The translations under genes were made by a program, and so were the position numbers. The notes below the pieces were generated by a model. That model saw nothing but the letters and a program-made list of their open reading frames with translations. It was not told where the DNA came from and did not search any database. From assembly GCA_053919585.1 (NCBI GenBank), contig CM132793.1: a stretch of DNA of 64,000 nucleotides. The stretch is one strand, 5' to 3'. The stretch comes from Euprymna scolopes. Its lineage: Eukaryota. Below, one piece after another: positions 7,811 through 35,286 of the stretch. The first letter of the stretch is position 1; each line of letters starts with the position of its first letter.

Positions 7811-9126
7811 TTTGTGAAATTCTGTGGAAAAAATGTTACTTAGCTATCATCTTAACTTACATTAATCATAGTTACATGATATCTATTTGCATATTGTGTT
7901 CATTGGCAAAAATCATTAGAAATTATGTTTGTAAGCTCAAAAACTGCATTGAATTAATGTCAAATAATCCTTTATGTGTAGATTATCAAAAAAAAAAGAA
8001 AAAAGAAAAAAAAAGAAATATCTTTTTCAAGCTAAGTTACCTTTTTTATGTAACGATTTGTTACATTACTATGTTATGGGAATTTCTTTAAATTTTAAAA
8101 CACATATCCAGTTACAAATGTCTTTTGTAGGATTCAAACTCTGCTGTTGGCATCGTAAAATCATCTGCCTTAGATAATGTGTATTCTACCGTTTTCATTT
8201 CTGCTATGTTTCTAATTGCGTACAGACAAGATTTGTTTAAACAAATTTTTAAACTCATTTTTAAATTGAGTATTTGCAATAATAACACAGTATAATATTT
8301 TCTGAAAAAAGGACGCATACGTGTGATGTTAAATGGTTTGCTGTCAGAAATTGCTGACTCGCAGTAAGTTAGTTTATCCACATTTTCACTATATTTTTCT
8401 TTGTCAAAATATTACAAGTGTTTCAACGAACTTACTGCACTTATATCCTCTTAGTAAAAATACCTTTCATTGACACGATTAGCAGCAAAATTGACTGTAA
8501 ATGTCCCTACATACGAAAAAAAACTTTCTATTCTAATAGCGTTTTACCTCTGGCCGCTTATCTTCAGAATTCCTTCTCTCCATGCCCCTCGCTCCTCGAC
8601 CATAACAACGTACATAACTTTAAATGTAATGTGAAAAACAACGTTCTGCCTAACTCTCTACTTAAGGGCCTAATTTATAGGGAGCAACCAATCGCAGTAG
8701 CGCCTAATGTCTCAGTGGCAATATGGGTGAATAAAAAAGTAAAAGAAATATTTTTTAAATGTTATGAGTCAGAGACACAATTTTTCAGTCATTTTTATTT
8801 TATCTAAATTTGTAACCGACGTCATGTGAATGTTTTGGTCAAAGTATTTTATTTTGTTCAACAACACTGAGATGTTTGAAGGGGAGAAACTTGAGAAGAT
8901 AACCGAAGTCAATATTAGTCATCAATAGTCTGTGGATCTCCACTAGGTTTTATGAAGAATAACTGTACAGTAGCGTCTCAGATCTGTAGAGACTTCGATA
9001 TGGTAAAGAGTAATTGGATACTTTAACATACTATAGCATTTCATATATTTGCTGACTGAGTAGCATAGATCTTATTATAATGGAGATTATGTATCTGTCT
9101 GTTTATAACTCGCTATTACTATCTGC

Positions 9127-10825
9127 GGTGCCCGGAAAACTCGTCCCGGGAAAACTCGTCTCGGGAAAACTCGTCTCCGGAAAACTCGTCTCCGGAAAAC
9201 TCGTCTCGGGAAAACTCGTCCCCTTTCGCTAGGTAGGAAAACTGGTCCCTTATTGAATTAGTATCGATTGAAAACACATTTTATGATCGTTCTTGAAGGA
9301 GAAATTGTTTTTTTAAAATAGACTATAGCCCCCCCCCCATAATATTGAAAAAAAAATTTTTTTACTTGTTTGATGTTTTTTTTTTTTTTTTTTTTTAAAT
9401 AAAATCGATTTTCTAAGTGTCCGTTTTCTACCTAACTGGCTAAGTTCTTAGTGGTTTCACTTATTTTAAAGCGTTTATTATGTTCATAAACGAGACCGCA
9501 TATTTTTTTATATTAATATAAAAAGAATTTACTTATTTACTGTTGTTATAAAAGGGTAAAATCGATTTGGGTTTGTATTACTGTACACATAGATTCGAAA
9601 AAATTGTCAAAAAACAAATATATAACAAATAAATGTTATCAAAGGCAAGATAAGTTACTTTCCTACCAAACTGGATATATTTTTCGTGTTTTTATTCAAT
9701 GTAACATGTTTATTCAGCTCGAAAAACATACAGTGTTTACCGATGTATTGGACAATTCAAAATAGCGGCCGACTCTCTCTTAAACACAGTAAGTTCGGGA
9801 ATAGGTGTTATAAATAATAAACTAGACAAAATACTATTAAAAAAACCACCGAATATATGTCAACCTATGTCACGGTAATATATATTGAGCGAGTTTCTAA
9901 CAGTATTTTGTCTAGTTTATTATTTTTCGAATCTATGTGTACAGTAATACAAACCAAAATTTTAATATTTTTTGAAATATAATTTAGAGAGGGGGGGGTT
10001 ATATCTCCCTCGGAAAAACAACCAACAAAAAATGAAATTAAAAAGATTCTTGATAAACGATAGCGGAGTTTTCAATAAAATTGATTAATAAATTTATTTA
10101 GTGATTACTTTTTCTCTTAATGATTGATTTTAGAATTTTGAAGTACAAATTAAAAAAATTAAAAATGAGTTAACGAGAGATTGTTAGCACATGGCATCTC
10201 TCGCGCCAAAAAAATATTTCGCTTTTGATTTATTAGTTAATTTTTGCAAAATTTGACAGGACGACAATAAATGTTGATAATTGATAGAATTATAATTTTA
10301 AATAACGCATGAGTGTATTGCATTTGGTATGAGAGAAAACGAAAACATAACAACAAAAAACTATCATAATTAAAAAACCAAAACAAAAAAGTAACGCTCC
10401 CAGTTTTTAATTTTTGTGTTTTGTTTTTTTTATTATTGTTTTTATGACTCCAAAAAACATCGTTAAAATAAGAACCAAAAAATTTTTTGATTAACTTTGT
10501 ATGAACATAATAAACGCTTTAAAATAAGTGAAACCACTAAGAACTTAGCCAGTTAGGTAGAAAAAAAACCCCAAAAAAACATTAAACAAATAAAAATATT
10601 TTTTAAAAATATTATGGGGGGGGGCTATAGTCTATTTTAAAAAGCAATATCTCCTTCAAGAACGATCATAAAATGTGTTTTCAATCGATATTTATTCAAT
10701 ACGGGACCAGTTTTCCTACCTAGCGAATGGGGACGAGTTTTCCCGAGACGAGTTTTCCGGAGACGAGTTTTCCCGAGACGAGTTTTCCCGAGACGAGTTT
10801 TCCCGGGACGAGTTTTCCTAAATTC
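9127..10825. mobile_element. Mutator-like (MULE/Phantom-type) foldback element, family A copy 1, non-autonomous
   Basis: Exact 9-bp TSD ACTATCTGC (9118-9126, 10826-10834); ~350-bp subterminal inverted repeats starting with 6+6 units of 15-bp GGAAAACTCGTCnnn; non-inverted caps GGTGCCC and GAATTTA; no ORF. Confidence 0.9.
9569..9955. mobile_element. GGGTTTG-ended MITE nested in family A copy 1 (right arm internally deleted)
   Basis: GGTTTGTATTACTGTACACATAGATTCGAA ... TTCGAATCTATGTGTACAGTAATACAAACC; homologous to 21533-23587. Confidence 0.75.
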
Positions 10826-10965
10826 ACTATCTGCATAGTAATTCACTAATGTTTTTTTACATCTTATTGCAGATTTCATTTTAAAATTTAGCTATTACTA
10901 AATGTCTTAACCTGTTGATCTAATCTATATTCTTTTAATATATCGAATATATATATATATTTAAA

Positions 10966-11006
<41 letters not shown>

Positions 11007-12114
11007 TTTAGGTAAAAATGGCACCGGTAAAAATGGCACAAGTGAATAAATAGGTAAAAATGGCACGTAATGGATTAATGAGAAAAATGACAAAACGAGA
11101 ACATGCATGAATATCTCACAGTATATTAAAATGTGAAAATGTGCGAAATTTGTCGAATTAAAAAGGGTGCTAGACGACCGATCTGGTCTCAAATTTTACC
11201 CTCGTTTTGAGTTTTCCAAAAGTTAGGTCATGTACTGCGACGTCACCGGTGTTACAGAAAATAATGAGAAGTTTTCAAATTTAAATAGATCCTAAATGCG
11301 AATCTCGTTTTTGAGATTTCCCAAAGTGCTATTACGTCACAGGTGTCAGAAATAACTTTTTTCATCTGTGTGGTAATTCATTCACCTCTTCTCCCATATT
11401 ATAAGTTGAACACTGGGCAGAAATAAATAAAAAAAATCTCCCTTATTTACAAACAAGTTCCTTTTATTTTAATTAGTTACTTCTATTTATTTGTTTCTTT
11501 ACCATATATTCGATTCGATGTCTATACTAATAGATGCCTTAAAAATAAGAATTATCGAACATTTATTACTATAGACAACAAAATGAAAAAGTAAAATATA
11601 CAACAAATAAATGCTACCAAACGCAAGATATGCTAAAAGTAAAAATAAAATAAAAATAAGCAGTTTATATATTTTTCAAAAATACAAACAAAATAACTTA
11701 GGCATAAACAATTATAGCGAGGAACAGTCCATTTTATGACGGCTTCTGATATTGAAATCAGAAACCAACATTATGTTATTCGTTCCTCGTAATTTATGTA
11801 CACTTAGTGTTGTTTCTTTTTTATGGAACTCCTGCATTGCAACATGTCGGCAATGGAGACGAGTTATCGACCCCTTTATGAAACTCAAATATAAAGAAGT
11901 TTCTTCATAAATATTTCATGTTTTTTAAATTACTACATTGATGAATTAAAATTATATTTTGATACATTTTATACAACCTTAATGTAAAAAAAAAAAAAAA
12001 ATACTAAAAACAATCTATAAATGTTTTTAGCATATTTTTTTTTTCAATTATGAATCGAATCACTCATTAAAAAGAAATATTAAAACTTTAAAATTATAGT
12101 TCGATACATTTTTA

Positions 12115-13500
12115 TACTTTAAAATTAGGCACCGCCAAAAATGGCCGCAAAATCAAGTTGTTGTTGTTTTTTAAAACTAAATTACATTTATTACAATCCA
12201 TTATTTCTGAGTAACTTTTTTTTTTCCAGAAAGATAAAACCCTGAATTTTATCATATAGAAAACAGAATAATGTAAAACTTTTTCTACTATTTTTAATTC
12301 AATTTTAAATGTTAAATTTTCCCAAAAAGTTAACAATTGATATTTTTTGTCTTGCACAAATAACGTACTTAAATATTTTTAAAAAAGGGTTTTTGAAATA
12401 ATTTATTTATTCATTTATTGTCTAACTAAGATTTAGGATGATTTTCTAAGAGAATATGCAAAAATATTATAATATAAGTACCTGAATTTCAAATAATTCC
12501 ACTTATTCATATAGGTAACCAGACATTTCGCGTCGCCGTAGAGTTCAGATCGACTCTGTTTACGTTTTCTTTTGATTGAGACGAAAACTATGGAAGACCA
12601 AACAGGCCAAAAAAACTTATTTTTCAGTGACGAAAATTTCAATGTATTATTAAGCTGAGGCTGGCCAGTACCAGATGGGTGACCATTTGTATGAGTTTGG
12701 TTTTTAATGTGTATGTGTGTGGGGGCCAGGCTCCCCAAAATGGGGGGAGGGGGCAATTTAAAGCAGAATAAAAAAAAATTATTTCAGCGCGTTTGGTCCA
12801 CCGTAGTCGAAAGGCGGCAAACGTTTTCAAACGAGATCGAAAAAAATGATGCTATTTTTAACACAAAGGGCACAATATTTATCGAATTTTTTTTTTTTGT
12901 ATCGATTATTCAAAGCATGCTCTGTTTAATAATGGTCATGCATTATTCGGCTCGCTAAAAAAAAATTGTTAATTTATTTATCAAAAATTTTAAAATGGCT
13001 TTTTTCGTATAAATATAAAAAAAATTTTTTTTTTGTTTTGCTTAACTTAAATTAATTATTTTACTTAACATATTCACCGAATTTCACACTTCAAAACTCA
13101 AAAGCGGGATAATTAAACACAATCGAAGTTCTGATATTCAGACGTCAAAATAAGGTATGCAAACAATGTTTTTTTGTTTGTTTTTTTTAAATCTATAATT
13201 CTGTCCCTTACAACAACACAATATGTTTTGTTCAGTTTCAGATGATTATTTTAAGCATATTTGTTCCCACTTCAAAACAAGGGGGGGGTTTGTAAGCAAA
13301 AAAAAATATATATATAAATATCGTTTATGAAAAATAAGTACACTGTTATAAAGTTAATTCTTCTCCTAATAATCGCTGAAAATTTCGTATTGATCGGATA
13401 ATTACCTGATTTTTGGTAGATTTTTAAAAAGACGGTCCGTCAAAAAGTACTGAACTGCCCCCCCCCCCAGTTTTGGCGGTGCCTATTTAAAATTAAGTAC
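12115..13500. mobile_element. Short-TIR element nested in family B
   Basis: TAGGCACCGCCAAAA (~12126) versus TTTTGGCGGTGCCTA (~13471). Confidence 0.4.
12650..12686 (+). repeat. 5S rRNA-derived fragment
   Basis: TTAAGC..GGCTGGCCAGTACCAGATGGGTGACC matches the 5S internal control region and the copy at 34596-34702. Confidence 0.5.
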
Positions 13501-14799
13501 TCCTTGTGCGTTGAGTCTTATAGCTCATATATTCAATGACCTCTCGCCTTGGTGCGGAAATAAACTTTTTTTATTTTGTAAACAAACGAACGTATTGTAC
13601 TTATGGATGTTTGATACCGAAAGAAATATGAACTTAAAAAAAATAATGTTACTTTTATTTCATTAAATTGTTAGATGAAAGTGCAAAATAGTTCACCCCA
13701 CCTCCATGTTAAAAATGGCTTTCTAAATAGTTATTATTTCAACGTTGTTTGTACTCTCTGGGTGTCAAACATTTATAAGTACCTATTTTACTGTTATTTA
13801 TATTGGAATCAGTTTATAATTTTATGTCAGAAATATACTCAGTGACCGATTGACCCCATAAATGTCCCCAGAATGGTTTCATATTCAACTGTGAGATGAA
13901 TTGGTCATAAAACCTTTTCGCACATATACGCGACAACACTTGTTATCTTTCACTTTAGTTTATGTGTCTGTTGAATTTGTTAATAAGGCAATAAAACTAT
14001 TTTTGGTAATTAACAACATTGATACAGTTTAGCTTTGAGAATTTTGTGTTACTGTTCCCATTCCAGCTTTGGACTACTATTCTCATCTTGAGTATTCCTA
14101 TTTACTTGCTTCCCCAAGAGGGCAAAGTTAGACACAAGGTCGTTTTTTTTATGTGGGCAATATCCAGCTCTCCTACAAGAGGAACTCTGGATCAGAACAA
14201 AAATTAAAATTGTCTCAGTCTAAAAGGATTTATTAATTCTTCATTAAACGGGGAGATAATAGGTGGAGTGTAGCATCAGAAGTGATACTACACTTTGTTA
14301 ACGTATCAGTCGATACAACCTCCGACAGAAATTCTGTGCAGATTCTCGAGTTCAACAGAAACATTCCAGAGTTCAATATTTATTCAATAATAGCAGTTTT
14401 GGATAAATAAGAAAAAATGGCAAAGCTCAACTTATCAACGATAAAATACATTCAATGATAAAATAAATTTAGAGTGCACCAAAATTAGTTTTTTATTTTA
14501 TCAAAGATAAAAGCCAGTCGAGGATAAGTGTCAACCAGGGAGTTTTTAATTACACTAAACAAAGTGCATCTTTTCTGGATCATTTTTATTTTTTTTTGTT
14601 TTAGGGGGAAAAAAAAATTATCCCCGTGTGTGTTTTATCCTTGATAACTAGCGATTCATTATGAAAAAAGAACCCAAAAATACAACTACAACTTGTCCAG
14701 AAAAGATGCATTTTGTTTAGTGTAATTGAAAACTTCCACATTAACCCTTATCCTCGAGTGTGTTTTATCCTTGATAAGTTGCGATTCATTAGTCCTAAG

Positions 14800-15190
14800 T
14801 ACCCCATTTTGGGGAGCTAGATAGTCACCAGATTAAAAACCGACACTGTGTCTAACTTTGCCCTCGCGGGGTGCAATTAAATAAGAACCTTTAGATAAAC
14901 AATGCTTCTAAACTGAGCTAATTGTAATTTTTTGTTCCGATCGAAAATGCCCCTTTTTGGGGAGCTGGATATTCCCCAGATTAAAAACCAACCTTGTGTC
15001 TAACTTTGCCCTAGCGGGGTGCAATTAAATAAGAACCTTTAGATAAACAATGCTTCTAAACTGAGGTAATTGTAATCTTTTGTTCCAATGAAAACTGCCC
15101 CTTTTTTTTGGGGGGGGGCTGGATATTAAAAATCGACCTTGTGTCTAACTCTGCCCTCGTTGACGGCAAGAAAATAGGAACTTTTACAAA
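14800..15190 (+). repeat. ~149-bp tandem repeat, about 2.5 copies, with an inverted partial copy at ~14060-14210
   Basis: Recurring GGGGAGCT..TGTGTCTAACTTTGCCCT..GGGGTGCAATTAAATAAGAACC; AGGGCAAAGTTAGACACA at ~14119. Confidence 0.8.
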
Positions 15191-15333
15191 ACCCAAAATG
15201 AGGTTAGAATTTGGGACCCCATAGCTTCAGTAGCACCTTTTGGTGCCATTTTTACCTAGTTATTCACTTGTGCCATTTTTACCGGTGCCATTTTTACTGG
15301 TGCCATTTTTACCGGTGCCATTTTTACCGAGCA

Positions 15334-15373
<40 letters not shown>

Positions 15374-20104: not shown

Positions 20105-21532
20105 TCTGTAAAAGACGCCTTTTTTAAATGTTGGAGAAAATTATGTAAAACTGAAATTACAAATTGGAACGCTCTTTTAAAAGTTAGCAGGTAAATTAAA
20201 AATTTTTTTTTTATAATATGAGAAGTTGATGTTCAATATATATAGTACTTTGAAGATGCATTTTTTAATTGAAAAACAAAATTATAATGGGTTTTCTGAA
20301 TATATCAACTGTAGAAGGTTAATTTATGTTGAACTTATGTAGGAAAAAAAAAAAAAGATGAGAATAGTAGTAGCCGAAGTACATATTATCAAACATTAGA
20401 AAAATGGTAATATAAGGTTCAGAACTGGAAGCAGAAGTATATAGAACTCTTCATTCAATGCCGGATAGACTTTCTTGTTTCGTTTATTTTCTCTATTTCT
20501 TAACATAATACACTATAGAAAATGGTGCCCGGAAAACTCGTCCCGGGAAAACTCGTCTCGGGAAAACCTGTCTCCGGAAAACTCGTCCCCTTTCGCTAGG
20601 TAGGAAAACTGGTCCCGTATTGAATAAATATCGATTGAAAACACATTTTATGATCGTTCTTGAAGGAGATATTGCTTTTTAAAATAGACTATAGCCCCCC
20701 CCCCCATAATATTAAAAAAAAATATTTTTACTTGTTTAATGTTTTTTTTTTTTAAATAAAATTGATTTTCTAAGTATCCATTTTCTACCTAACTGGCTAA
20801 GTTCTTAGTGGTTTCACTTATTTTAAAGCGTTTATTATGTTCATACAAAGTTAATTACAAATTTTTTTGTTCTTATTTTAACGATGTTTTTTGGAGTCAT
20901 CAAAAAACAATAATAAAAAAAAACAAAACAAAAAAATTAAAAAAAACAGGGAGCGATTCGATTCTTCGTTACTTTTTTTGTTTTTGTTTTTTAATTATGA
21001 TAGTTTTTTATTCTTGTTATGTTTTTGTTTTCTCTCATACCAAATGCACTCATGCGTTATTTAAAATTATAATTTTATCTATTATCAACATTTATTGTCG
21101 TCCTGTCAAATTTTGCAAAAATTAACTAATAAATTAAAAGCGAAATATTTTTTTGGCGCGAGAGATGTCATGTGCTAACAATGTCTCGTTAACTCATTTT
21201 TAATTTTTACTTCAAAATTCTAAAATCAATCATTAAGAGAAAAAGTAATCACTAAATAAATTTATTAATCAATTTTATTGAAAACTCCGCTATCGTTTAT
21301 CAAGAATCTTTTTAATTTCATTTTTTGTTGGTTGTTTTTTGGAGGGAGATATAGTTTTTACCCCCCCCCCCCTCTCAAAATTAAAAATTAAAAAATATTA
21401 AAATTTATTATTTTCTTTTTAAAACCAAATCTCCCTTAGTAATTTCTTTAATTTTCTATTTTTTAGCGATTATCAAGACCCTTAAGATGTGATATACCGG
21501 ACATTATTTCTCGTTCTCATGTAACACTTTTG

Positions 21533-23587
21533 GGGTTTGTATTACTGTACACATAGATTCGAAAAAGTTGTCAAAAAACAAATATATAACAAACAAATAT
21601 TATCAAAGGCAAGATAAGTTACTTTTCTACCAAACTGGGTAATTTATTTTGTTTTTATTCAATGTAACATGTTTATTCGGTGCCGGGAAAACTCGTCCCG
21701 GGAAAACTCGTCTCGGGAAAACTCGTCTCCGGAAAACTCGTCCCCTTTCGCTAGGTAGGAAAACTGGTCCCTTATTGAATAAATATCGATTGAAAACACA
21801 TTTTATGATCGTTCTTGAAGGAAATATTGTTTTTTAAAATAAACTATAGCCCCCCCATAATATTTAAAAAAAAATATTTTTACTTGTTTAATGTTTTTTT
21901 TGTGTTTTTAATAAAAGCGTTTATTATGTTCATAAACGAGACCGCATATTTTTTTTTATATTAATATAAAAAGAATTTACTTATATACTGTTGTTTATAA
22001 AAGGGTAAAATCGATTTTTCTACCTCGCCGACTATGTTGTTTATTTAATTCATTTGGAATCGTTTATTTGGTAAAGAAAAAAAAACAGAAAACAAACAAA
22101 AAACATGTTACGGGAGAACGAGAAATAATGCCCGTTATCTTAGGGGGTCTTGATAATCGTTAAAAAATAGAAAATTAAAGAAATTACTGAGGGAGATTTG
22201 GTTTTAAAAAGAAAATAATAAATTTTAATATTTTTTAAAATATAATTTAGAGAGAGAGAGAGGGGGGGGATAAAACCTATATCTCCCTTCGAAAAGCAAC
22301 CAACAAAAAATGAAATTAAAAAGATTCTTGATAAACGATAGCGGAGTTTTCAATAAAATTGATTAATAAATTTATTTAGTGATTACTTTCTCTCTTAATG
22401 ATTGATTTTAGAATTTTGAAGTAAAAATTAAAAAAATTAAAAATGAGTTAACGAGAGATTGTTAGCACATGGTATCTCTCGCGCCAAAAAAATATTTCGC
22501 TTTTAATTTATTAGTTAATTTTTGCAAAATTTGACACGACGACAATAACTGTTGATAATTGATAAAATCATAATTTTAAATAACGCATGAGTGCATTTGG
22601 TATGACAGAAAACAAAAACATAACAACAAAAAACTATCATAATTAAAAAAACAAAACCAAAAGCGTAACGAAGAATCGAATCGCTCCCTGTTTTTTAATT
22701 TTTGGGTTTTGTTTTTTTTATTGTTTTTATGACTCCAAAAAACATCGTTAAAATAAGAACAAAAAAATTTGTAATTAACTTTGTATGAACATAATAAACG
22801 CTTTAAAATAAGTTAAATCACTAAGAACTTAGCCAGTTAGGTAGAAAACGGACACTTAGAAAATCGATTTTATTTAAAAAAAAAAAAAAAAAAAAAACAT
22901 TAAACAAGTAAAAATATTTTTTTTAAAATATTATGGGGGGGGGGCTATAGTTTATTTAAAAAAACAATATCGCCTTCAAGAACGATCATAAAATGTGTTT
23001 TCAATCGATATTTATTCAATAAGGGACCAGTTTTCCTACCTAGCGAAAGGGGACGAGTTTTCCCGAGACGAGTTTTCCGGAGACGAGTTTTCCCGAGACG
23101 AGTTTTCCCGGGACGAGTTTTCCTAAATTCTGTTTATTCAGCTCGAAAAACATGCAGTGTTTACCGGTGTATTGGAAAATTCAAAATGGCGCCCGACACT
23201 CTCTTTAACATGGTAAGTTCGGGAAAAGGTGTTATAAATAATAAACTAGACAAAATACTATTAAAAAACATCGAATATATGTCAAAATATGTCACGGTAA
23301 CATATATTAAGCGAGTTTCTAGCAGTATTTTGTATAGTTTATTATTTATAACATCTTTTCCTGAACTTACCGTGTTAAAGAGAGTGTCGGGCGCCATTTT
23401 GAATTTTCCAATACATCGGGAAACACTGTATGCTTTTCGAGCTGAATAAACATGTCACATTGAATAAAAACCCGAAAAATATATCCAGTTAGGTAGAAAA
23501 ATAACTTATCTTGCCTTTGATAACATTTATTTGTTATATATTTGTTTTTTGACAACTTCGAATCTATGTGTACAGTAATACAAACCC
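21533..23587. mobile_element. GGGTTTG-ended palindromic MITE, interrupted by family A copy 3
   Basis: Long near-perfect arms (roughly 270 bp) around a short spacer near 23270-23315; flanking direct repeat CACTTTTG (21525-21532, 23588-23595). Confidence 0.8.
21679..23130. mobile_element. Mutator-like foldback element, family A copy 3 (nested)
   Basis: Exact 9-bp TSD TGTTTATTC (21670-21678, 23131-23139); caps GGTGCCG and GAATTTA; 4+5 array units; lacks the MITE. Confidence 0.9.
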
Positions 23588-26446
23588 CACTTTTGTTTTT
23601 TTCTGTGGGTTTTTTCTTAACCGAATAAACGATTCCAAATAAATTAAACAACAGTAAATAAGTAAATTCTTTTTTAGATTAATATTAAAAAAAATATGCG
23701 GTCTCGTTTATGAACATAATAAACGCTTTAAAATAAGTGAAACCACTAAGAACTTAGCCAGTTAGGTAGAAAACGGACACTTAGAAAATCGATTTTATTT
23801 AAAAAAAAAAACATTAAACAAGAAAAAATATTTTGTTTAAATATTATGGGAGGCTATAGTCTATTTTAAAAAACAATATCTCCTTCAAGAACGATCATAA
23901 AATGTGTTTTCAATCGATATTTATTCAATACGGGACCAGTTTTCCTATCTAGCGAAAGGGGACGAGTTTTCCGGGGTCGAGTTTTCCGGAGACGAGTTTT
24001 CCCGAGACGAGTTTTCCCGGGACGAGTTTTCCTAAATTCATAGAAAATATTTGTTTATTAGTATTTATATTCACATCAGTAAAGAATCTATATAATAATA
24101 CGTCGATACACTCGTTTGAACAGATGTTATCACTGTTCACCCCACTTAAAAGAATGAGATGATCTTGTTAGGTCAAAGTTATCTCCCCTTTAATATATAT
24201 GTTTTCAGCATCAAAACCGAGGGTACTTATTAACACACGAGTTCTCTCCATGGTTGGAAATTTCAGAATGAGAATTCTCTTTCTGGCGTGATTTACAAAA
24301 CTGTCAAATATGTATGATCAACGTTCCTTTTGAGCTTTCTTTTTAAACTTTACGGAATTTGACTATGAGGTTATCTTTCTGTTTGAGTGATTCTTAAAAT
24401 ACTGGTCAAAGAACAAAAAAATTTTGTCTTACATTTTTCCTACACTGGGTAACTTGCCGGCACTAAATTCAATATAAATACAATATACATATTTAGTGTA
24501 TTTGCGCATATATTCAGTTTCATTTTTCTTGGCTGTGTGTGTGTGTTTTTTTTTCATTGTAATAGGCCAATTGTACTACTTGTTGAATAATAATAGTTGT
24601 GTCTTTAGTTTAATCCTAATATCTTGGTTATTTCTTTGCTTTACATGCATTTTAACTTTTTTTATGGTCATCTGTGACAAACTTTAAAAATTGAATTCAA
24701 CTGTTTCTTCTTGTATGCATTATTAACAATAGCATTCATTAATAATGCCGCCCACGTGGTTGTAAAACAAATTATTTCCAAGCAAATTATCAGCTAACGT
24801 GATGATATCGGAATATCAAATATTTACAGCCCAATCGGTGAGGATTAAATTAAGAAATATCTGGTGTCGTTAAATTAAAATCAAATGGATTTTACGCATT
24901 TCAAAATGGCTTGTTCGAAAAACACACATAAGATGTCATGAATAGAATTTTATCCTGATGCACTTAAAAGTGATGTCGTTTATTTTTAAAAGATATTTAA
25001 CTGACAATTATAATTATAGTAAGAAAGAGAATATTTTTTAATGTTAGAATATGCGTTTTATTGATCTGACAAGTGTGTTTTACAACTGTTGGATTTTCAT
25101 GGGGTTTTACGAATGAAGTAAATAATTAAACTTAAACTGTCAAGAGATTAATCAATAGTGAGTGATACGAGATGGTTTACTCTACTCTGATTTCACTATG
25201 GAGAAAATAGTTGTAAAATATGGGAATATCCACTCTTTTATTAAGTCTTTTTGACCAGAAAATAATTACAAATGGAATTTAGCAAAATGAATTTGCATTC
25301 TTTCATACAATTTTAAGGTGTTTAATTAGTTTGATGTACCTCTTTTCCCACCAAAACATGATGTGATATATAGTCAGCTTGGAGCATTCAGCTACCCATG
25401 AAGGGAGCATTCTATAAGTCATGTTTGAAAACATTTGCATTCCTTGATGAGAGTAACTAAGGTAACAAGCAATAAACCTATCCCCCCCCCCCCGAAAGGA
25501 AGAGACAAACCATTGGAGTATAGTCTCTTTAACAGAACAAAACATTTTAACGACCTCGACCCAAAGGTTACAATTGGCCTAAAAATGTTCAGGCAATTTG
25601 CCCGAAAGTTAATGTAATGAATCGGCCAGTGTTTAAACTTGGTTCATTGAGCTCGCTGTCTGCCTTGATAAGGGTTACGCCCCAGACATTTAAACAAAAA
25701 CCAGTATTTTTGCAATAAAAGAATGAAATCATTATTACAATGTAAATGGTACAACTAACAGTTAAAAAAACATAGCTCTCAGGGGAAAAAATTAATTTAC
25801 AAAAAAAAAAAAAAGAAAAAAGAAAAAAAATCTTTCTTTTTTTGGCTGATACATTTTAGGCATTTTTTCCACTTCAGATCAAATATATTTTTGGCACCAA
25901 AAAGATTCCTTTGAAATTGAACTTCTCCAAAGAAAAGTTACATTGATTTATGCAATTCCATGCAACAAATGCATCAAAATGAGATCTTTGCAGTGAGTAA
26001 AAAAGGCAAATAACAAAATGGAAAAGAGAAAATAAAATAATAGAAAACGTTAACAGTTGGTTTAAAAATTCCGGCAAGATGATTGGATTTGTCAAAAATG
26101 ATTTAGAGAAAAATGGATTAGAAATGTTTATCAGATTTCTGACATTCAGTCACATTAATAAGAAAACAAGTTAATGAAAGCCAAAAAAATGACAAACTAT
26201 TATTTAAAATGTGCATGAAAATATATTAAAACCATAAATTTGTCAAAGTAATTAATTGCATACTGTAATGTTTCATTTTGAATCCAAAGATCTTTTAGAT
26301 AAAATGTTGGCTGTAGGTGTTGGTTACTCAAAAGTTTCTATTTTCTAATCGGACGGATATATGTAGTTACTAGCTAATTTCATATATGAACCATTAAAAC
26401 AAATTTTTTTTTTTCACTTATTAGTTTCATGTGACATTTTTACTTA

Positions 26447-34741: not shown

Positions 34742-35286
34742 CTAGCTGTAACTGGCCACGCGTTGCTGTGGCTTATTGGAAATGAAAAAAAAAAAATGCT
34801 GACGGTTACGGAAATGCCCCTCCCCTCTCTGAAATCCACACAGGACACCTGGTTTCTCTTTTATCACCTTAATCTCATCGATTACAAACATAACACTCAT
34901 GAGTTAAAAAAGAAGAAGAAATTTTTTAAAAAGATTATTTTTATGATTTTTATCGTTGAATCTGACGGGTTGGTTTGTTTTTTTTTTGCGGTAAATGTGA
35001 CAACGAAAATAACCTGGCCCAATCACTGCAAATAAAATACTATAGTAGTAGTAGTAGTAGTAGTAGTAATAGTAGTAGTAGCAGTAGTAATTAAACAAAT
35101 AAATAAATTACGTTTCATTTCATTTAGAGTTTCCGGCCTGGTCTTTAAGTTTGATGCCCATCAAACTTAAAGACCAGGCCGGAAACTCTAAATGAAATGA
35201 AACGTAATTTTTTTATTTAAAGACCAGGCCGGAAACTCTAAATGAAATGAAACGTAATTTTTTTTATTAATTTATTTATTTGTTTA

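What the first reader, a model, noticed from the sequence alone, without database searches (positions are those of the whole stretch)
9127..15335. Two Mutator-like families with different repeat words share one polar end grammar: 7-bp cap, 15-bp array, 27-bp-offset site
Seen: family A arrays use GGAAAACTCGTCnnn and family B uses GGTAAAAATGGCACC, yet both have a 15-bp period. Both end the array with one extra site displaced by exactly 27 bp (A 9209 to 9236; B 11026 to 11053 and 15256 to 15283). Both carry the same pair of non-inverted outer 7-mers: GAATTTA at one end in all four elements, and GGTGCCC/GGTGCCG/GGTGCTC at the other. Known: 9-bp TSDs, tandem-array TIRs and subterminal inverted repeats are described for MULE/Phantom/foldback elements. 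Inference: cleavage uses two distinct conserved caps and fixed spacing, while the binding word is a family-specific, exchangeable specificity module. I cannot tell whether this precise grammar has been published.
Basis: partly seen in the sequence, partly recalled or inferred. Interest (0 to 1): 0.78.

Follow-up and report, generated by a model that had tools for sequence, protein, structure and literature searches.

The report
Foldback Mutator transposons with asymmetric caps
Two related families of cut-and-paste Mutator-type transposons carry the same pair of unlike 7-bp end caps outside 15-bp repeat arrays. The pattern is real and mobile, but this end layout was already published in 2011 for the nematode element Tm1.

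Summary
All four elements in the window have one GGTGC(C/T)(C/G) cap and one GAATTTA cap. Inside each cap lie 15-bp units, then a 12-bp spacer, then one more unit, which gives the 27-bp offset. The three A elements have clear 9-bp target-site duplications (TSDs).

The pattern holds genome-wide:
- The two caps occur about 1:1: 2826 vs 2556 for family A, and 259 vs 258 for family B.
- Facing end pairs are 64 unlike-cap against 1 like-cap.
- Unit spacings are almost only 15 or 27 bp.

Both families are Mutator-like elements (MULEs) of the FLYWCH + MULE-domain (Phantom-type) kind. Family B has roughly 5.4-kb autonomous copies with open ~485-aa reading frames that are 98% alike. Family A's only transposase copies are frameshifted and sit in one 15.5-kb foldback.

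An empty-site allele of A1 in public DNA runs shows that the caps move with the element.

The layout is not new. Tm1 of Meloidogyne (PMC3169594) has the same plan, and Muta1 biochemistry (PMC5499845) supports separate roles for the terminal motif and the repeats.

What this work adds:
- decapod-type members of the group;
- several repeat words under one cap pair;
- cap sequences conserved in relatives from a firefly, a gastropod and other assemblies.

The parts
9118..9126 (.). Left copy of the 9-bp target-site duplication of A1 (actatctgc)
   Evidence: The empty-site contigs join 9117 directly to 10826.
9127..10825 (+). Family A non-autonomous foldback MULE, copy A1 (1699 bp). GGTGCCC cap on the left, GAATTTA cap (other strand) on the right.
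   Evidence: inverted arms of about 260 bp; insertion polymorphism.
9127..9133 (+). Cap 2 of A1: GGTGCCC
9134..9223 (+). Left array of A1: six 15-bp units, GGAAAACTCGTCnnn
9224..9250 (+). 12-bp spacer tttcgctaggta followed by the inner unit GGAAAACTGGTCcct, which starts 27 bp after the last array unit
10702..10818 (-). Right end of A1: inner unit, 12-bp spacer, six-unit array
10819..10825 (-). Cap 1 of A1: GAATTTA (taaattc on the + strand)
10826..10834 (.). Right copy of the A1 TSD (actatctgc)
11004..15335 (-). Family B non-autonomous element (4332 bp). It is a deletion derivative of the 5.4-kb autonomous B element, with the transposase region lost and about 1.36 kb of unrelated DNA inside. 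It is inserted in (AT)n. Its GGTGCTC end is at the right.
11004..11066 (+). GAATTTA end of B: cap 11004-11010, units at 11011 and 11026, 12-bp spacer, inner unit at 11053
15243..15335 (-). GGTGCTC end of B: inner unit 15243-15256, spacer, four units 15270-15328, cap 15329-15335 (gagcacc on the + strand)
20524..24039 (+). Family A copy A2 (TSD atagaaaat at 20515-20523 and 24040-24048). GGTGCCC on the left, GAATTTA on the right. Its interior is inverted relative to A1.
21679..23130 (+). Family A copy A3, nested in A2 (TSD tgtttattc at 21670-21678 and 23131-23139). GGTGCCG on the left, GAATTTA on the right. A1 carries the uninterrupted target site near 9710.

Best explanation
Families A and B are sister lineages of foldback-type Mutator-like elements of the FLYWCH + MULE-domain (Phantom-type) group. 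Their ends have the Tm1 plan: 9-bp TSD, a 7-bp cap that differs between the two ends, a variable number of 15-bp units starting with GG, a 12-bp spacer, and one or two further units.

Shown:
- the structure and its genome-wide constancy;
- the transposase type;
- mobility of the whole unit including the caps.

Inferred, by analogy with Muta1:
- Several transposase molecules bind the 15-bp units, probably through the fast-diverging FLYWCH N-terminus.
- The catalytic core cuts at the outer edge of the cap and joins that end to a target with a 9-bp stagger.
- The cap pair is kept by selection, because a productive complex needs one end of each kind. This would explain why the caps stay constant while the repeat word changes between families and species.
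For: Structure and constancy:
- Structure and TSDs.
- Caps about 1:1, and 64 unlike-cap against 1 like-cap facing pairs.
- Spacings are almost only 15 or 27 bp.

Transposase:
- The B transposase has FLYWCH (PF04500) plus MULE (PF10551).
- Six B reading frames are open and 97.4-98.6% identical to each other.
- In all seven autonomous-size B copies held the frame lies on the same strand; where a cap could be read, GGTGCTC is at the 5' end (six copies) and GAATTTA, or a near variant, at the 3' end (five of six).
- The A-type transposase lies between A ends at contig C8. It is 67% identical to B in the core and 44% in the N-terminus.

Mobility:
- The empty-site allele of A1 lacks the element, both caps and one TSD copy. 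It is seen in contigs of two DNA runs: table 8.

Caps are independent of the interior:
- The interior of A occurs in both orientations relative to the caps (3 copies vs 2).
- The reading frame's orientation relative to the caps differs between lineages.
- So the asymmetry is a property of the ends, not of transcription.

Relatives:
- Elements from a firefly, a gastropod and four unnamed ENA assemblies have 14-16-bp GG-initial arrays, 8-9-bp TSDs, and caps resembling GAATNTA and GGTNNNC. Identity to the reference caps is 85 of 126 positions; the best of 200,000 random draws reached 61.
- A Portunus element has the B word and the GAATTTA cap.

Published precedents: Tm1 and Muta1.
Against: - No biochemical or genetic test of cap function exists for these elements.
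- Muta1, the only element of this group studied in vitro, has the same terminal motif at both ends, so a need for two kinds of end has no experimental precedent in MULEs.
- The higher divergence of the N-terminus is also what relaxed constraint alone would give.
- Family A is about ten times more abundant than B and has a polymorphic insertion, yet no intact A-type transposase was found. If the B enzyme moves A elements, the word is not a strict specificity module.
- The relatives compared are kin, so the cap similarity shows common descent. Selection is inferred only from the contrast with the more diverged words.
Confidence: 0.8

Rival explanations
1. The caps are passive passengers. The transposase measures a fixed 7-bp distance outward from the first bound unit and cuts there whatever the sequence. 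On this view the two caps are frozen flanks of an ancestral insertion, inherited without selection.
For: The distance from the cleavage site to the first GG is exactly 7 bp at both ends in every lineage examined. The two caps share only their first base. Positions 4-6 of the GGT-type cap vary freely.
Against: The caps are shared by A and B, whose words and interiors no longer align. They are still recognisable in relatives whose transposases are only 44-50% identical, whereas neutral 7-mers should have randomised over that distance. Mutations near the tip of the Muta1 terminal motif reduce cleavage, joining and excision.
Confidence: 0.12
2. Family A is moved in trans by the intact family B transposase. 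Recognition would then rest on the shared caps and the shared GGnAAA core of the units, so the 'word' is not a family-specific specificity module.
For: There are at least 2800 A ends, and the A1 insertion is polymorphic. Yet only frameshifted A-type transposase copies were found, while B has several open, 98%-alike frames. The A and B units agree at 8 of 15 positions, including GG and AAA (read).
Against: A-type transposase genes do exist and lie between A ends. The genome search scores only the best candidates, so an intact A copy may have been missed. The shared frameshift lies in a T run, where assemblies err. The polymorphism could be old.
Confidence: 0.2
3. The two caps differ because they belong to transcription signals (promoter side vs terminator side) of the transposase gene rather than to transposition.
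For: Among the autonomous-size B copies, GGTGCTC is upstream of the reading frame in every copy whose 5' end could be read (six), and the 3' cap, readable in six, is GAATTTA or a near variant in five.
Against: Non-coding copies keep the caps. The A interior occurs in both orientations relative to the caps. The C8 element carries the gene in both orientations. In other lineages the GAAT-type cap lies upstream of the gene in about half the cases.
Confidence: 0.03

Closest known systems
Tm1, a Mutator/Foldback family of Meloidogyne (Gross & Williamson 2011, PMC3169594)
   Same: - 9-bp TSDs.
- Two different 7-bp motifs outside the inverted repeat, one per end.
- GG(A) directly inside the cap.
- 1-9 tandem units of about 14 bp, with numbers differing between the two ends.
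- A conserved 12-bp motif followed by one more unit.
- Mostly MITE-like copies, with a single or decayed FLYWCH+MULE transposase copy.
- A rare copy with the same motif at both ends.
   Different: - The motif sequences differ (CGGTTAA / CCTACCC; unit CGATTCAGTATCGC; GA-rich 12-mer). Only CCTACCC-GGA vs GGTGCCC-GGA is suggestive, at 7 of 10 positions.
- The period here is a strict 15 bp.
- Several words share one cap pair here.
- B is young, with several open reading frames, and A has a polymorphic insertion. Tm1 was judged senescent.
Muta1 of Aedes aegypti (Liu & Wessler 2017, PMC5499845), placed in the Phantom family by Dupeyron et al. 2019 (PMC6446971)
   Same: A foldback-type MULE with 8-9-bp TSDs. 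It has a short terminal motif, then 12-bp repeats with 3-4-bp linkers, giving a 15-16-bp period. The repeat number differs between the two ends in non-autonomous copies. It supplies the experimental basis for 'repeats bind, tip is cut and joined'.
   Different: Muta1 has the same 10-bp imperfect palindrome (GGGTCTACCC) at both ends. No spacer plus extra unit was described for it.
Drosophila Foldback (FB) elements, and sub-TIR or non-TIR MULEs such as Jittery (as cited in PMC3169594; from established knowledge)
   Same: 9-bp TSDs, composite ends made of tandem repeats, long inverted arms, and short non-inverted tips in some MULEs.
   Different: Different repeat periods and sequences. A conserved pair of caps has not, to my knowledge, been described for them. 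I could not read Marquez & Pritham 2010.
Two-kinds-of-end systems: P element 5'/3' ends, Tn7 and Mu left/right ends, the V(D)J 12/23 rule (established knowledge)
   Same: A working analogy only: productive synapsis may need one end of each kind.
   Different: In those systems the asymmetry lies in spacer length or site arrangement, and the cleaved tips are alike. Here the tips themselves differ. No relationship is implied.

Membership tests
Mutator-like elements (MULE superfamily) | Transposase with the MULE domain (PF10551) | tested here: met
   Scores are 50.0 bits for B and 39.7 bits for A, against a cut-off of 27.6.
Mutator-like elements (MULE superfamily) | Target-site duplication of about 9 bp (8-11) | tested here: met
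   A1, A2, A3, the C8 element and B copies outside microsatellites. The empty site retains a single copy.
Mutator-like elements (MULE superfamily) | Terminal inverted repeats | tested here: inconclusive
   The inverted repeats are sub-terminal. The outermost 7 bp are not inverted, as in Tm1 and other sub-TIR MULEs.
Phantom subclass of MULEs | N-terminal FLYWCH zinc finger plus MULE domain (stated in PMC3169594) | tested here: met
   PF04500 covers residues 4-62 of B and residues 17-63 of the A N-terminal piece (its methionine is at residue 14).
Phantom subclass of MULEs | Phylogenetic placement with canonical Phantom, Muta and Tm1-A transposases | not tested
The nearest named relatives are unclassified decapod, mollusc and firefly proteins.
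Tm1-type end architecture | Two different 7-bp motifs outside the inverted repeat, one at each end | tested here: met
   64 unlike-cap pairs against 1 like-cap pair.
Tm1-type end architecture | Variable number of tandem units of about 14 bp, starting right after a GG(A) motif | tested here: met
   About 2-14 units per end; period 15 bp.
Tm1-type end architecture | A conserved motif of about 12 bp followed by one more unit | tested here: met
   a 27-bp step at both ends of every copy in the window.
Tm1-type end architecture | Sequence identity of the motifs with Tm1 | tested here: not met
   The caps, unit and spacer differ from the published Tm1 motifs. These are therefore other families with the same plan, not members of Tm1 itself.
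Foldback elements (type 2, as used in PMC5499845) | Ends composed of subterminal tandem repeats able to fold back | tested here: met
   The A arms are about 260 bp, rising to 5.5 kb in the C8 element.

The most novel reading that the evidence does not exclude
FLYWCH-MULE (Phantom-type) transposons obey a 'one end of each kind' rule. Two different 7-bp tips (about GAATNTA and GGTNNNC) would both be required, and would have been kept by selection from molluscs to arthropods (possibly also nematodes), while the 15-bp binding word co-evolves with the FLYWCH domain. This would be a tip-level asymmetry not described for DDE cut-and-paste transposases.
Probability: 0.3. Interest if true: 0.6.

Novelty: new member of a known kind. 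Interest (0 to 1): 0.38.

Why it matters
It gives this genome a well-defined and probably still mobile DNA transposon group of several thousand copies. Its ends are easy to annotate, and B is a candidate active MULE.

It also extends an oddity reported once, in nematodes, to a whole clade. The cap pair is conserved in sequence across families and across distant hosts, while the repeat word changes. That makes a specific question testable with the existing Muta1-style yeast and in vitro assays: does a MULE transposase need two different tips? The natural A and B ends would serve as ready-made swap partners.

Tried and rejected
- **Distant FLYWCH-MULE genes in this genome.** L050 and L051 (36% and 29% identity) have no arrays or inverted repeats around them, so they say nothing about ends.
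- **L053.** This 75% A-like remnant has stops and no arrays.
- **A third word.** GGAAAATTGGGCAAC has 40 GAATTTA ends and 32 GGTGTCC ends. But the GGTGTCC copies sit inside a larger 1.28-kb repeat with a conserved upstream flank and a single unit, and no facing pairs exist. I do not count it as a demonstrated complete family.
- **Decayed or truncated relatives.** The ends of the Mytilus element (L055) are decayed. The left end of the Portunus element is truncated. L061 has no TSD.
I therefore could not fetch the like-cap exception, the 50-bp mini-element or 20 further A copies.
  - Marquez & Pritham 2010 is not held.
- **Artefact or single-family readings, rejected.** 'Assembly artefact' and 'one diverged family' do not hold. 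Thousands of dispersed copies have different TSDs, there is an empty-site allele, and A shows no DNA similarity to B.
Full report
**1. What is in the window**

- **A1 (9127-10825)** is flanked by the 9-bp duplication actatctgc.
  - It starts with GGTGCCC, followed by six 15-bp units GGAAAACTCGTCnnn from 9134.
  - Next come the 12-bp spacer tttcgctaggta and one more unit at 9236.
  - The right end mirrors this arrangement, but its outermost 7 bp read GAATTTA on the other strand.
- **A2 (20524-24039, TSD atagaaaat)** and **A3 nested in it (21679-23130, TSD tgtttattc)** follow the same plan, with caps GGTGCCC or GGTGCCG on one side and GAATTTA on the other.
- **B (11004-15335)** lies in an (AT)n tract. 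Its unit is GGTAAAAATGGCACC. It has GAATTTA at the left, GGTGCTC (other strand) at the right, and the same 27-bp step at both ends.
- The words are far above chance: 35 matches against 0.09 expected for A, and 9 against 0.56 for B.

**2. Genome-wide test**

The window is C11:46624001-46688000 of a 5.9-Gb assembly.

| Measure | Family A | Family B |
|---|---|---|
| Exact cap+word, GAATTTA end | 2826 | 259 |
| Exact cap+word, GGTGC end | 2556 | 258 |
| Matches to the reversed control pattern | 0 | 0 |
| Facing pairs within 12 kb, unlike : like caps | 35 : 1 (contig C1) | 29 : 0 (C1-C11) |
| Unit spacing of 15 bp | 53 | 194 |
| Unit spacing of 27 bp | 13 | 41 |
| Other spacings | 0 | 3 |

- About 30 of the B GGTGC-end matches lie in a satellite on C12.
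- Twelve further B copies and the autonomous ones all show GGTGCTC paired with GAATTTA or a point variant of it. Those outside microsatellites have 9-bp TSDs.
- The inner block may hold two units, and the 42-bp block is sometimes reiterated.

**3. What the elements are**

- **Family B, autonomous form.**
  - A long B copy carries a decayed gene with a MULE domain.
  - A six-frame search of the genome with that piece found many copies with open frames of about 500 codons.
  - With flanks, these are elements of about 5.4 kb. The single reading frame lies on the same strand in every copy; GGTGCTC is the 5' cap in the six copies where it could be read, and the 3' cap is GAATTTA or a near variant in five of six.
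  - The protein, about 485 aa from the first methionine, has a FLYWCH zinc finger (PF04500, residues 4-62) and a MULE domain (PF10551).
  - Six frames are open and 97.4-98.6% identical at the DNA level, so the family is young.
- **The B copy in the window** is a deletion derivative. It has lost the transposase region and contains about 1.36 kb of unrelated DNA.
- **Family A, transposase copies.**
  - A transposase 67% identical to B in the catalytic core, but only 44% in the FLYWCH N-terminal 156 residues, lies between family A ends on C8.
  - That locus is one 15.5-kb element. Its TSD is gattccgat, with GGTGCCG at one end and GAATTTA at the other.
  - Its arms are inverted copies of each other (1.18 kb and 4.3 kb, 97% identical), and each arm carries the gene.
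  - Both gene copies share a frameshift in a T run just after the FLYWCH-linker region, and each has further breaks.
  - Only two other, decayed, A-type remnants were found.
- **A versus B DNA.** A1 has no blastn match to B. A and B are therefore two families whose enzymes are homologous.

**4. The caps move with the element**

- Contigs of two public DNA runs of the same coded organism join window position 9117 directly to 10826 (table 8: a 1275-nt contig in X1 and a 188-nt contig in X3).
- That is the site without A1, without both caps, and with a single copy of actatctgc. A1 is therefore an insertion polymorphism, or heterozygous in the sampled animal.
- Independently, A1 carries the uninterrupted target tgtttattc into which A3 inserted in A2.

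**5. The polarity belongs to the tips only**

- With the GGTGC cap placed at the left, the non-palindromic interior of A has one orientation in A1, A3 and a copy in L054. It has the opposite orientation in A2 and a copy in L043.
- Across lineages, the reading frame lies downstream of the GGT-type cap in four cases and of the GAAT-type cap in four.
- The asymmetry is therefore not a promoter or terminator feature.

**6. Relatives elsewhere**

- The B protein has about 200 relatives with the same two domains in decapods (Portunus 75%, Homarus, Palaemon), molluscs (Mytilus, Nucella, Gigantopelta) and a firefly.
- The closest named relative is the Portunus (crab) protein at 75% identity; a Portunus element also carries the B word with the GAATTTA cap. 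I infer a decapod host. The organism is coded, and I do not name it.
- Around nine such genes I found inverted arrays of 14-16-bp GG-initial units, mostly with a spacer of 8-12 bp and a further unit. Seven of the nine have TSDs of 8-9 bp.

| Element | GAAT-type cap | GGT-type cap |
|---|---|---|
| L057, Aquatica leii (firefly) | GAATCTA | CGTTGGC |
| L056, ENA assembly | GAATGTA | GGTAATC |
| L059, Gigantopelta aegis (gastropod) | GAATCCA | GGTAAAC |
| L060, element 1 | GAATCCG | GGTATCC |
| L060, element 2 | GAAGGTA | GGTGCGC |
| L062, element 1 | GAATGTA | GATGGAC |
| L062, element 2 | GAATGTA | GGTGTGC |
| L063 | GAGTGTA | GAGGAAC |
| L064 | GGGTGTA | GGGGTAC |

- Against GAATTTA and GGTGCCC these caps agree at 85 of 126 positions. 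The best of 200,000 random draws from the same loci reached 61.
- These elements are kin, so this shows common descent of the cap pair. Selection is inferred from the contrast with the words, which keep only a GG(A/T)AAA-like core.
- Within this genome, GAATTTA also precedes variant words (GGAAAATTCGTCC, GGAAAAATCGTCC, GGAAGATTCGTC, a few GGAAGAGATTCTGTC) and GGAAAATTGGGCAAC. That search gave 208 matches against 70 in the control. The last word could not be shown to form complete elements.

**7. Comparison with what is known**

- **Tm1.** Gross & Williamson 2011 (PMC3169594) describe the following for Tm1 of Meloidogyne:
  - 9-bp TSDs;
  - asymmetric 7-bp motifs (CGGTTAA and CCTACCC) outside the inverted repeat;
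  - a 3-bp GGA;
  - 1-9 tandem units of about 14 bp;
  - a conserved 12-bp motif followed by one more unit;
  - a FLYWCH+MULE transposase of the Phantom subclass;
  - one exceptional copy with the same motif at both ends.

The authors called the non-inverted tips unusual and cited sub-TIR MULEs.
- **Muta1.** Liu & Wessler 2017 (PMC5499845) showed that the transposase binds the 12-bp repeats, which have 3-4-bp linkers and hence a 15-16-bp period. More repeats give more binding and more excision. Cleavage needs the terminal motif plus at least one repeat, and joining needs the terminal motif. In Muta1 the terminal motif is the same at both ends.
- **Phantom family.** Dupeyron et al. 2019 (PMC6446971) place the Muta elements in the Phantom family. 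They list FLYWCH, 8-10-bp TSDs and variable TIRs for it, and say nothing about asymmetric tips.

**8. Most likely mechanism**

- Shown: the anatomy, its constancy, the enzyme type, and mobility.
- Inferred:
  - Transposase oligomers load on the 15-bp units through the FLYWCH region.
  - The core cuts 7 bp outside the first unit and inserts with a 9-bp stagger.
  - Both cap sequences matter, and copies with two like caps rarely propagate.
- Open question: who moves family A. Either an intact A-type gene was missed or mis-assembled at a T run, or the B enzyme acts in trans, or the A1 polymorphism is old.

**9. Verdict**

The interpretation as MULEs with conserved caps and variable words is supported. 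The mechanism is plausible but untested. The layout itself is already published, so these are new members of a known kind.

What is added is the conservation of the cap pair across families and distant hosts, a young and possibly active B family, and a polymorphic A insertion.

Noticed in passing
G000 C12:11433129-11445916 (outside the window): Dozens of GGTGCAC/GGTGCGC + B-word matches, all on one strand, often about 86 bp apart. This looks like a satellite built from a family B end.
   Followed up: no
G000 C8:25295393-25310901 (L052 + L054): A 15.5-kb family A element whose two arms (1.18 kb + 4.3 kb, 97% identical) each carry a frameshifted A-type transposase gene. A 1.4-kb A copy is nested in one arm. 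The caps are nevertheless unlike (GGTGCCG / GAATTTA).
   Followed up: partly
G000 C1:80764285-80764864 and C1:186805906-186805955: The only like-cap facing pair found (GGTGCCC at both ends, 580 bp), and a 50-bp 'element' made of cap + unit, 12 bp, then unit + cap.
   Followed up: no
window 20524-24039 vs 9127-10825; also L043:6763-8262 and L054:6361-7765: The interior of family A occurs in both orientations relative to the caps (3 copies vs 2).
   Followed up: yes
G000 C10:20905564-20926109: Four GAATTTA B ends on one strand at steps of about 6.1-7.3 kb, with GGTGCTC ends facing two of them. This is a local tandem duplication containing B copies.
   Followed up: no
L056:1966-8690 (ENA ERZ25074796): Two copies of a related element lie head to tail, with only one GAATGTA cap between the inner arrays. 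A TSD-like 8-mer is found only at the outer ends. This is a tandem dimer formed after, or moved as, one insertion.
   Followed up: partly
window 14802-15106: A 148-bp unit repeated 2.1 times (91% match) inside the B element. One search shows this stretch matching the autonomous B element, so it appears to be B's own sequence.
   Followed up: no
window 35167-35264: A perfect 50-bp tandem duplication (2.0 copies, 100% match) next to trinucleotide runs.
   Followed up: no
L065-L067 (G000 C1:52570175-52573195 and others): A 1.28-kb dispersed repeat that contains, internally, ...tgaatttca-GGTGTCC-GGAAAATTGGGCAAC. This is an A-like end fragment embedded in another repeat.
   Followed up: partly
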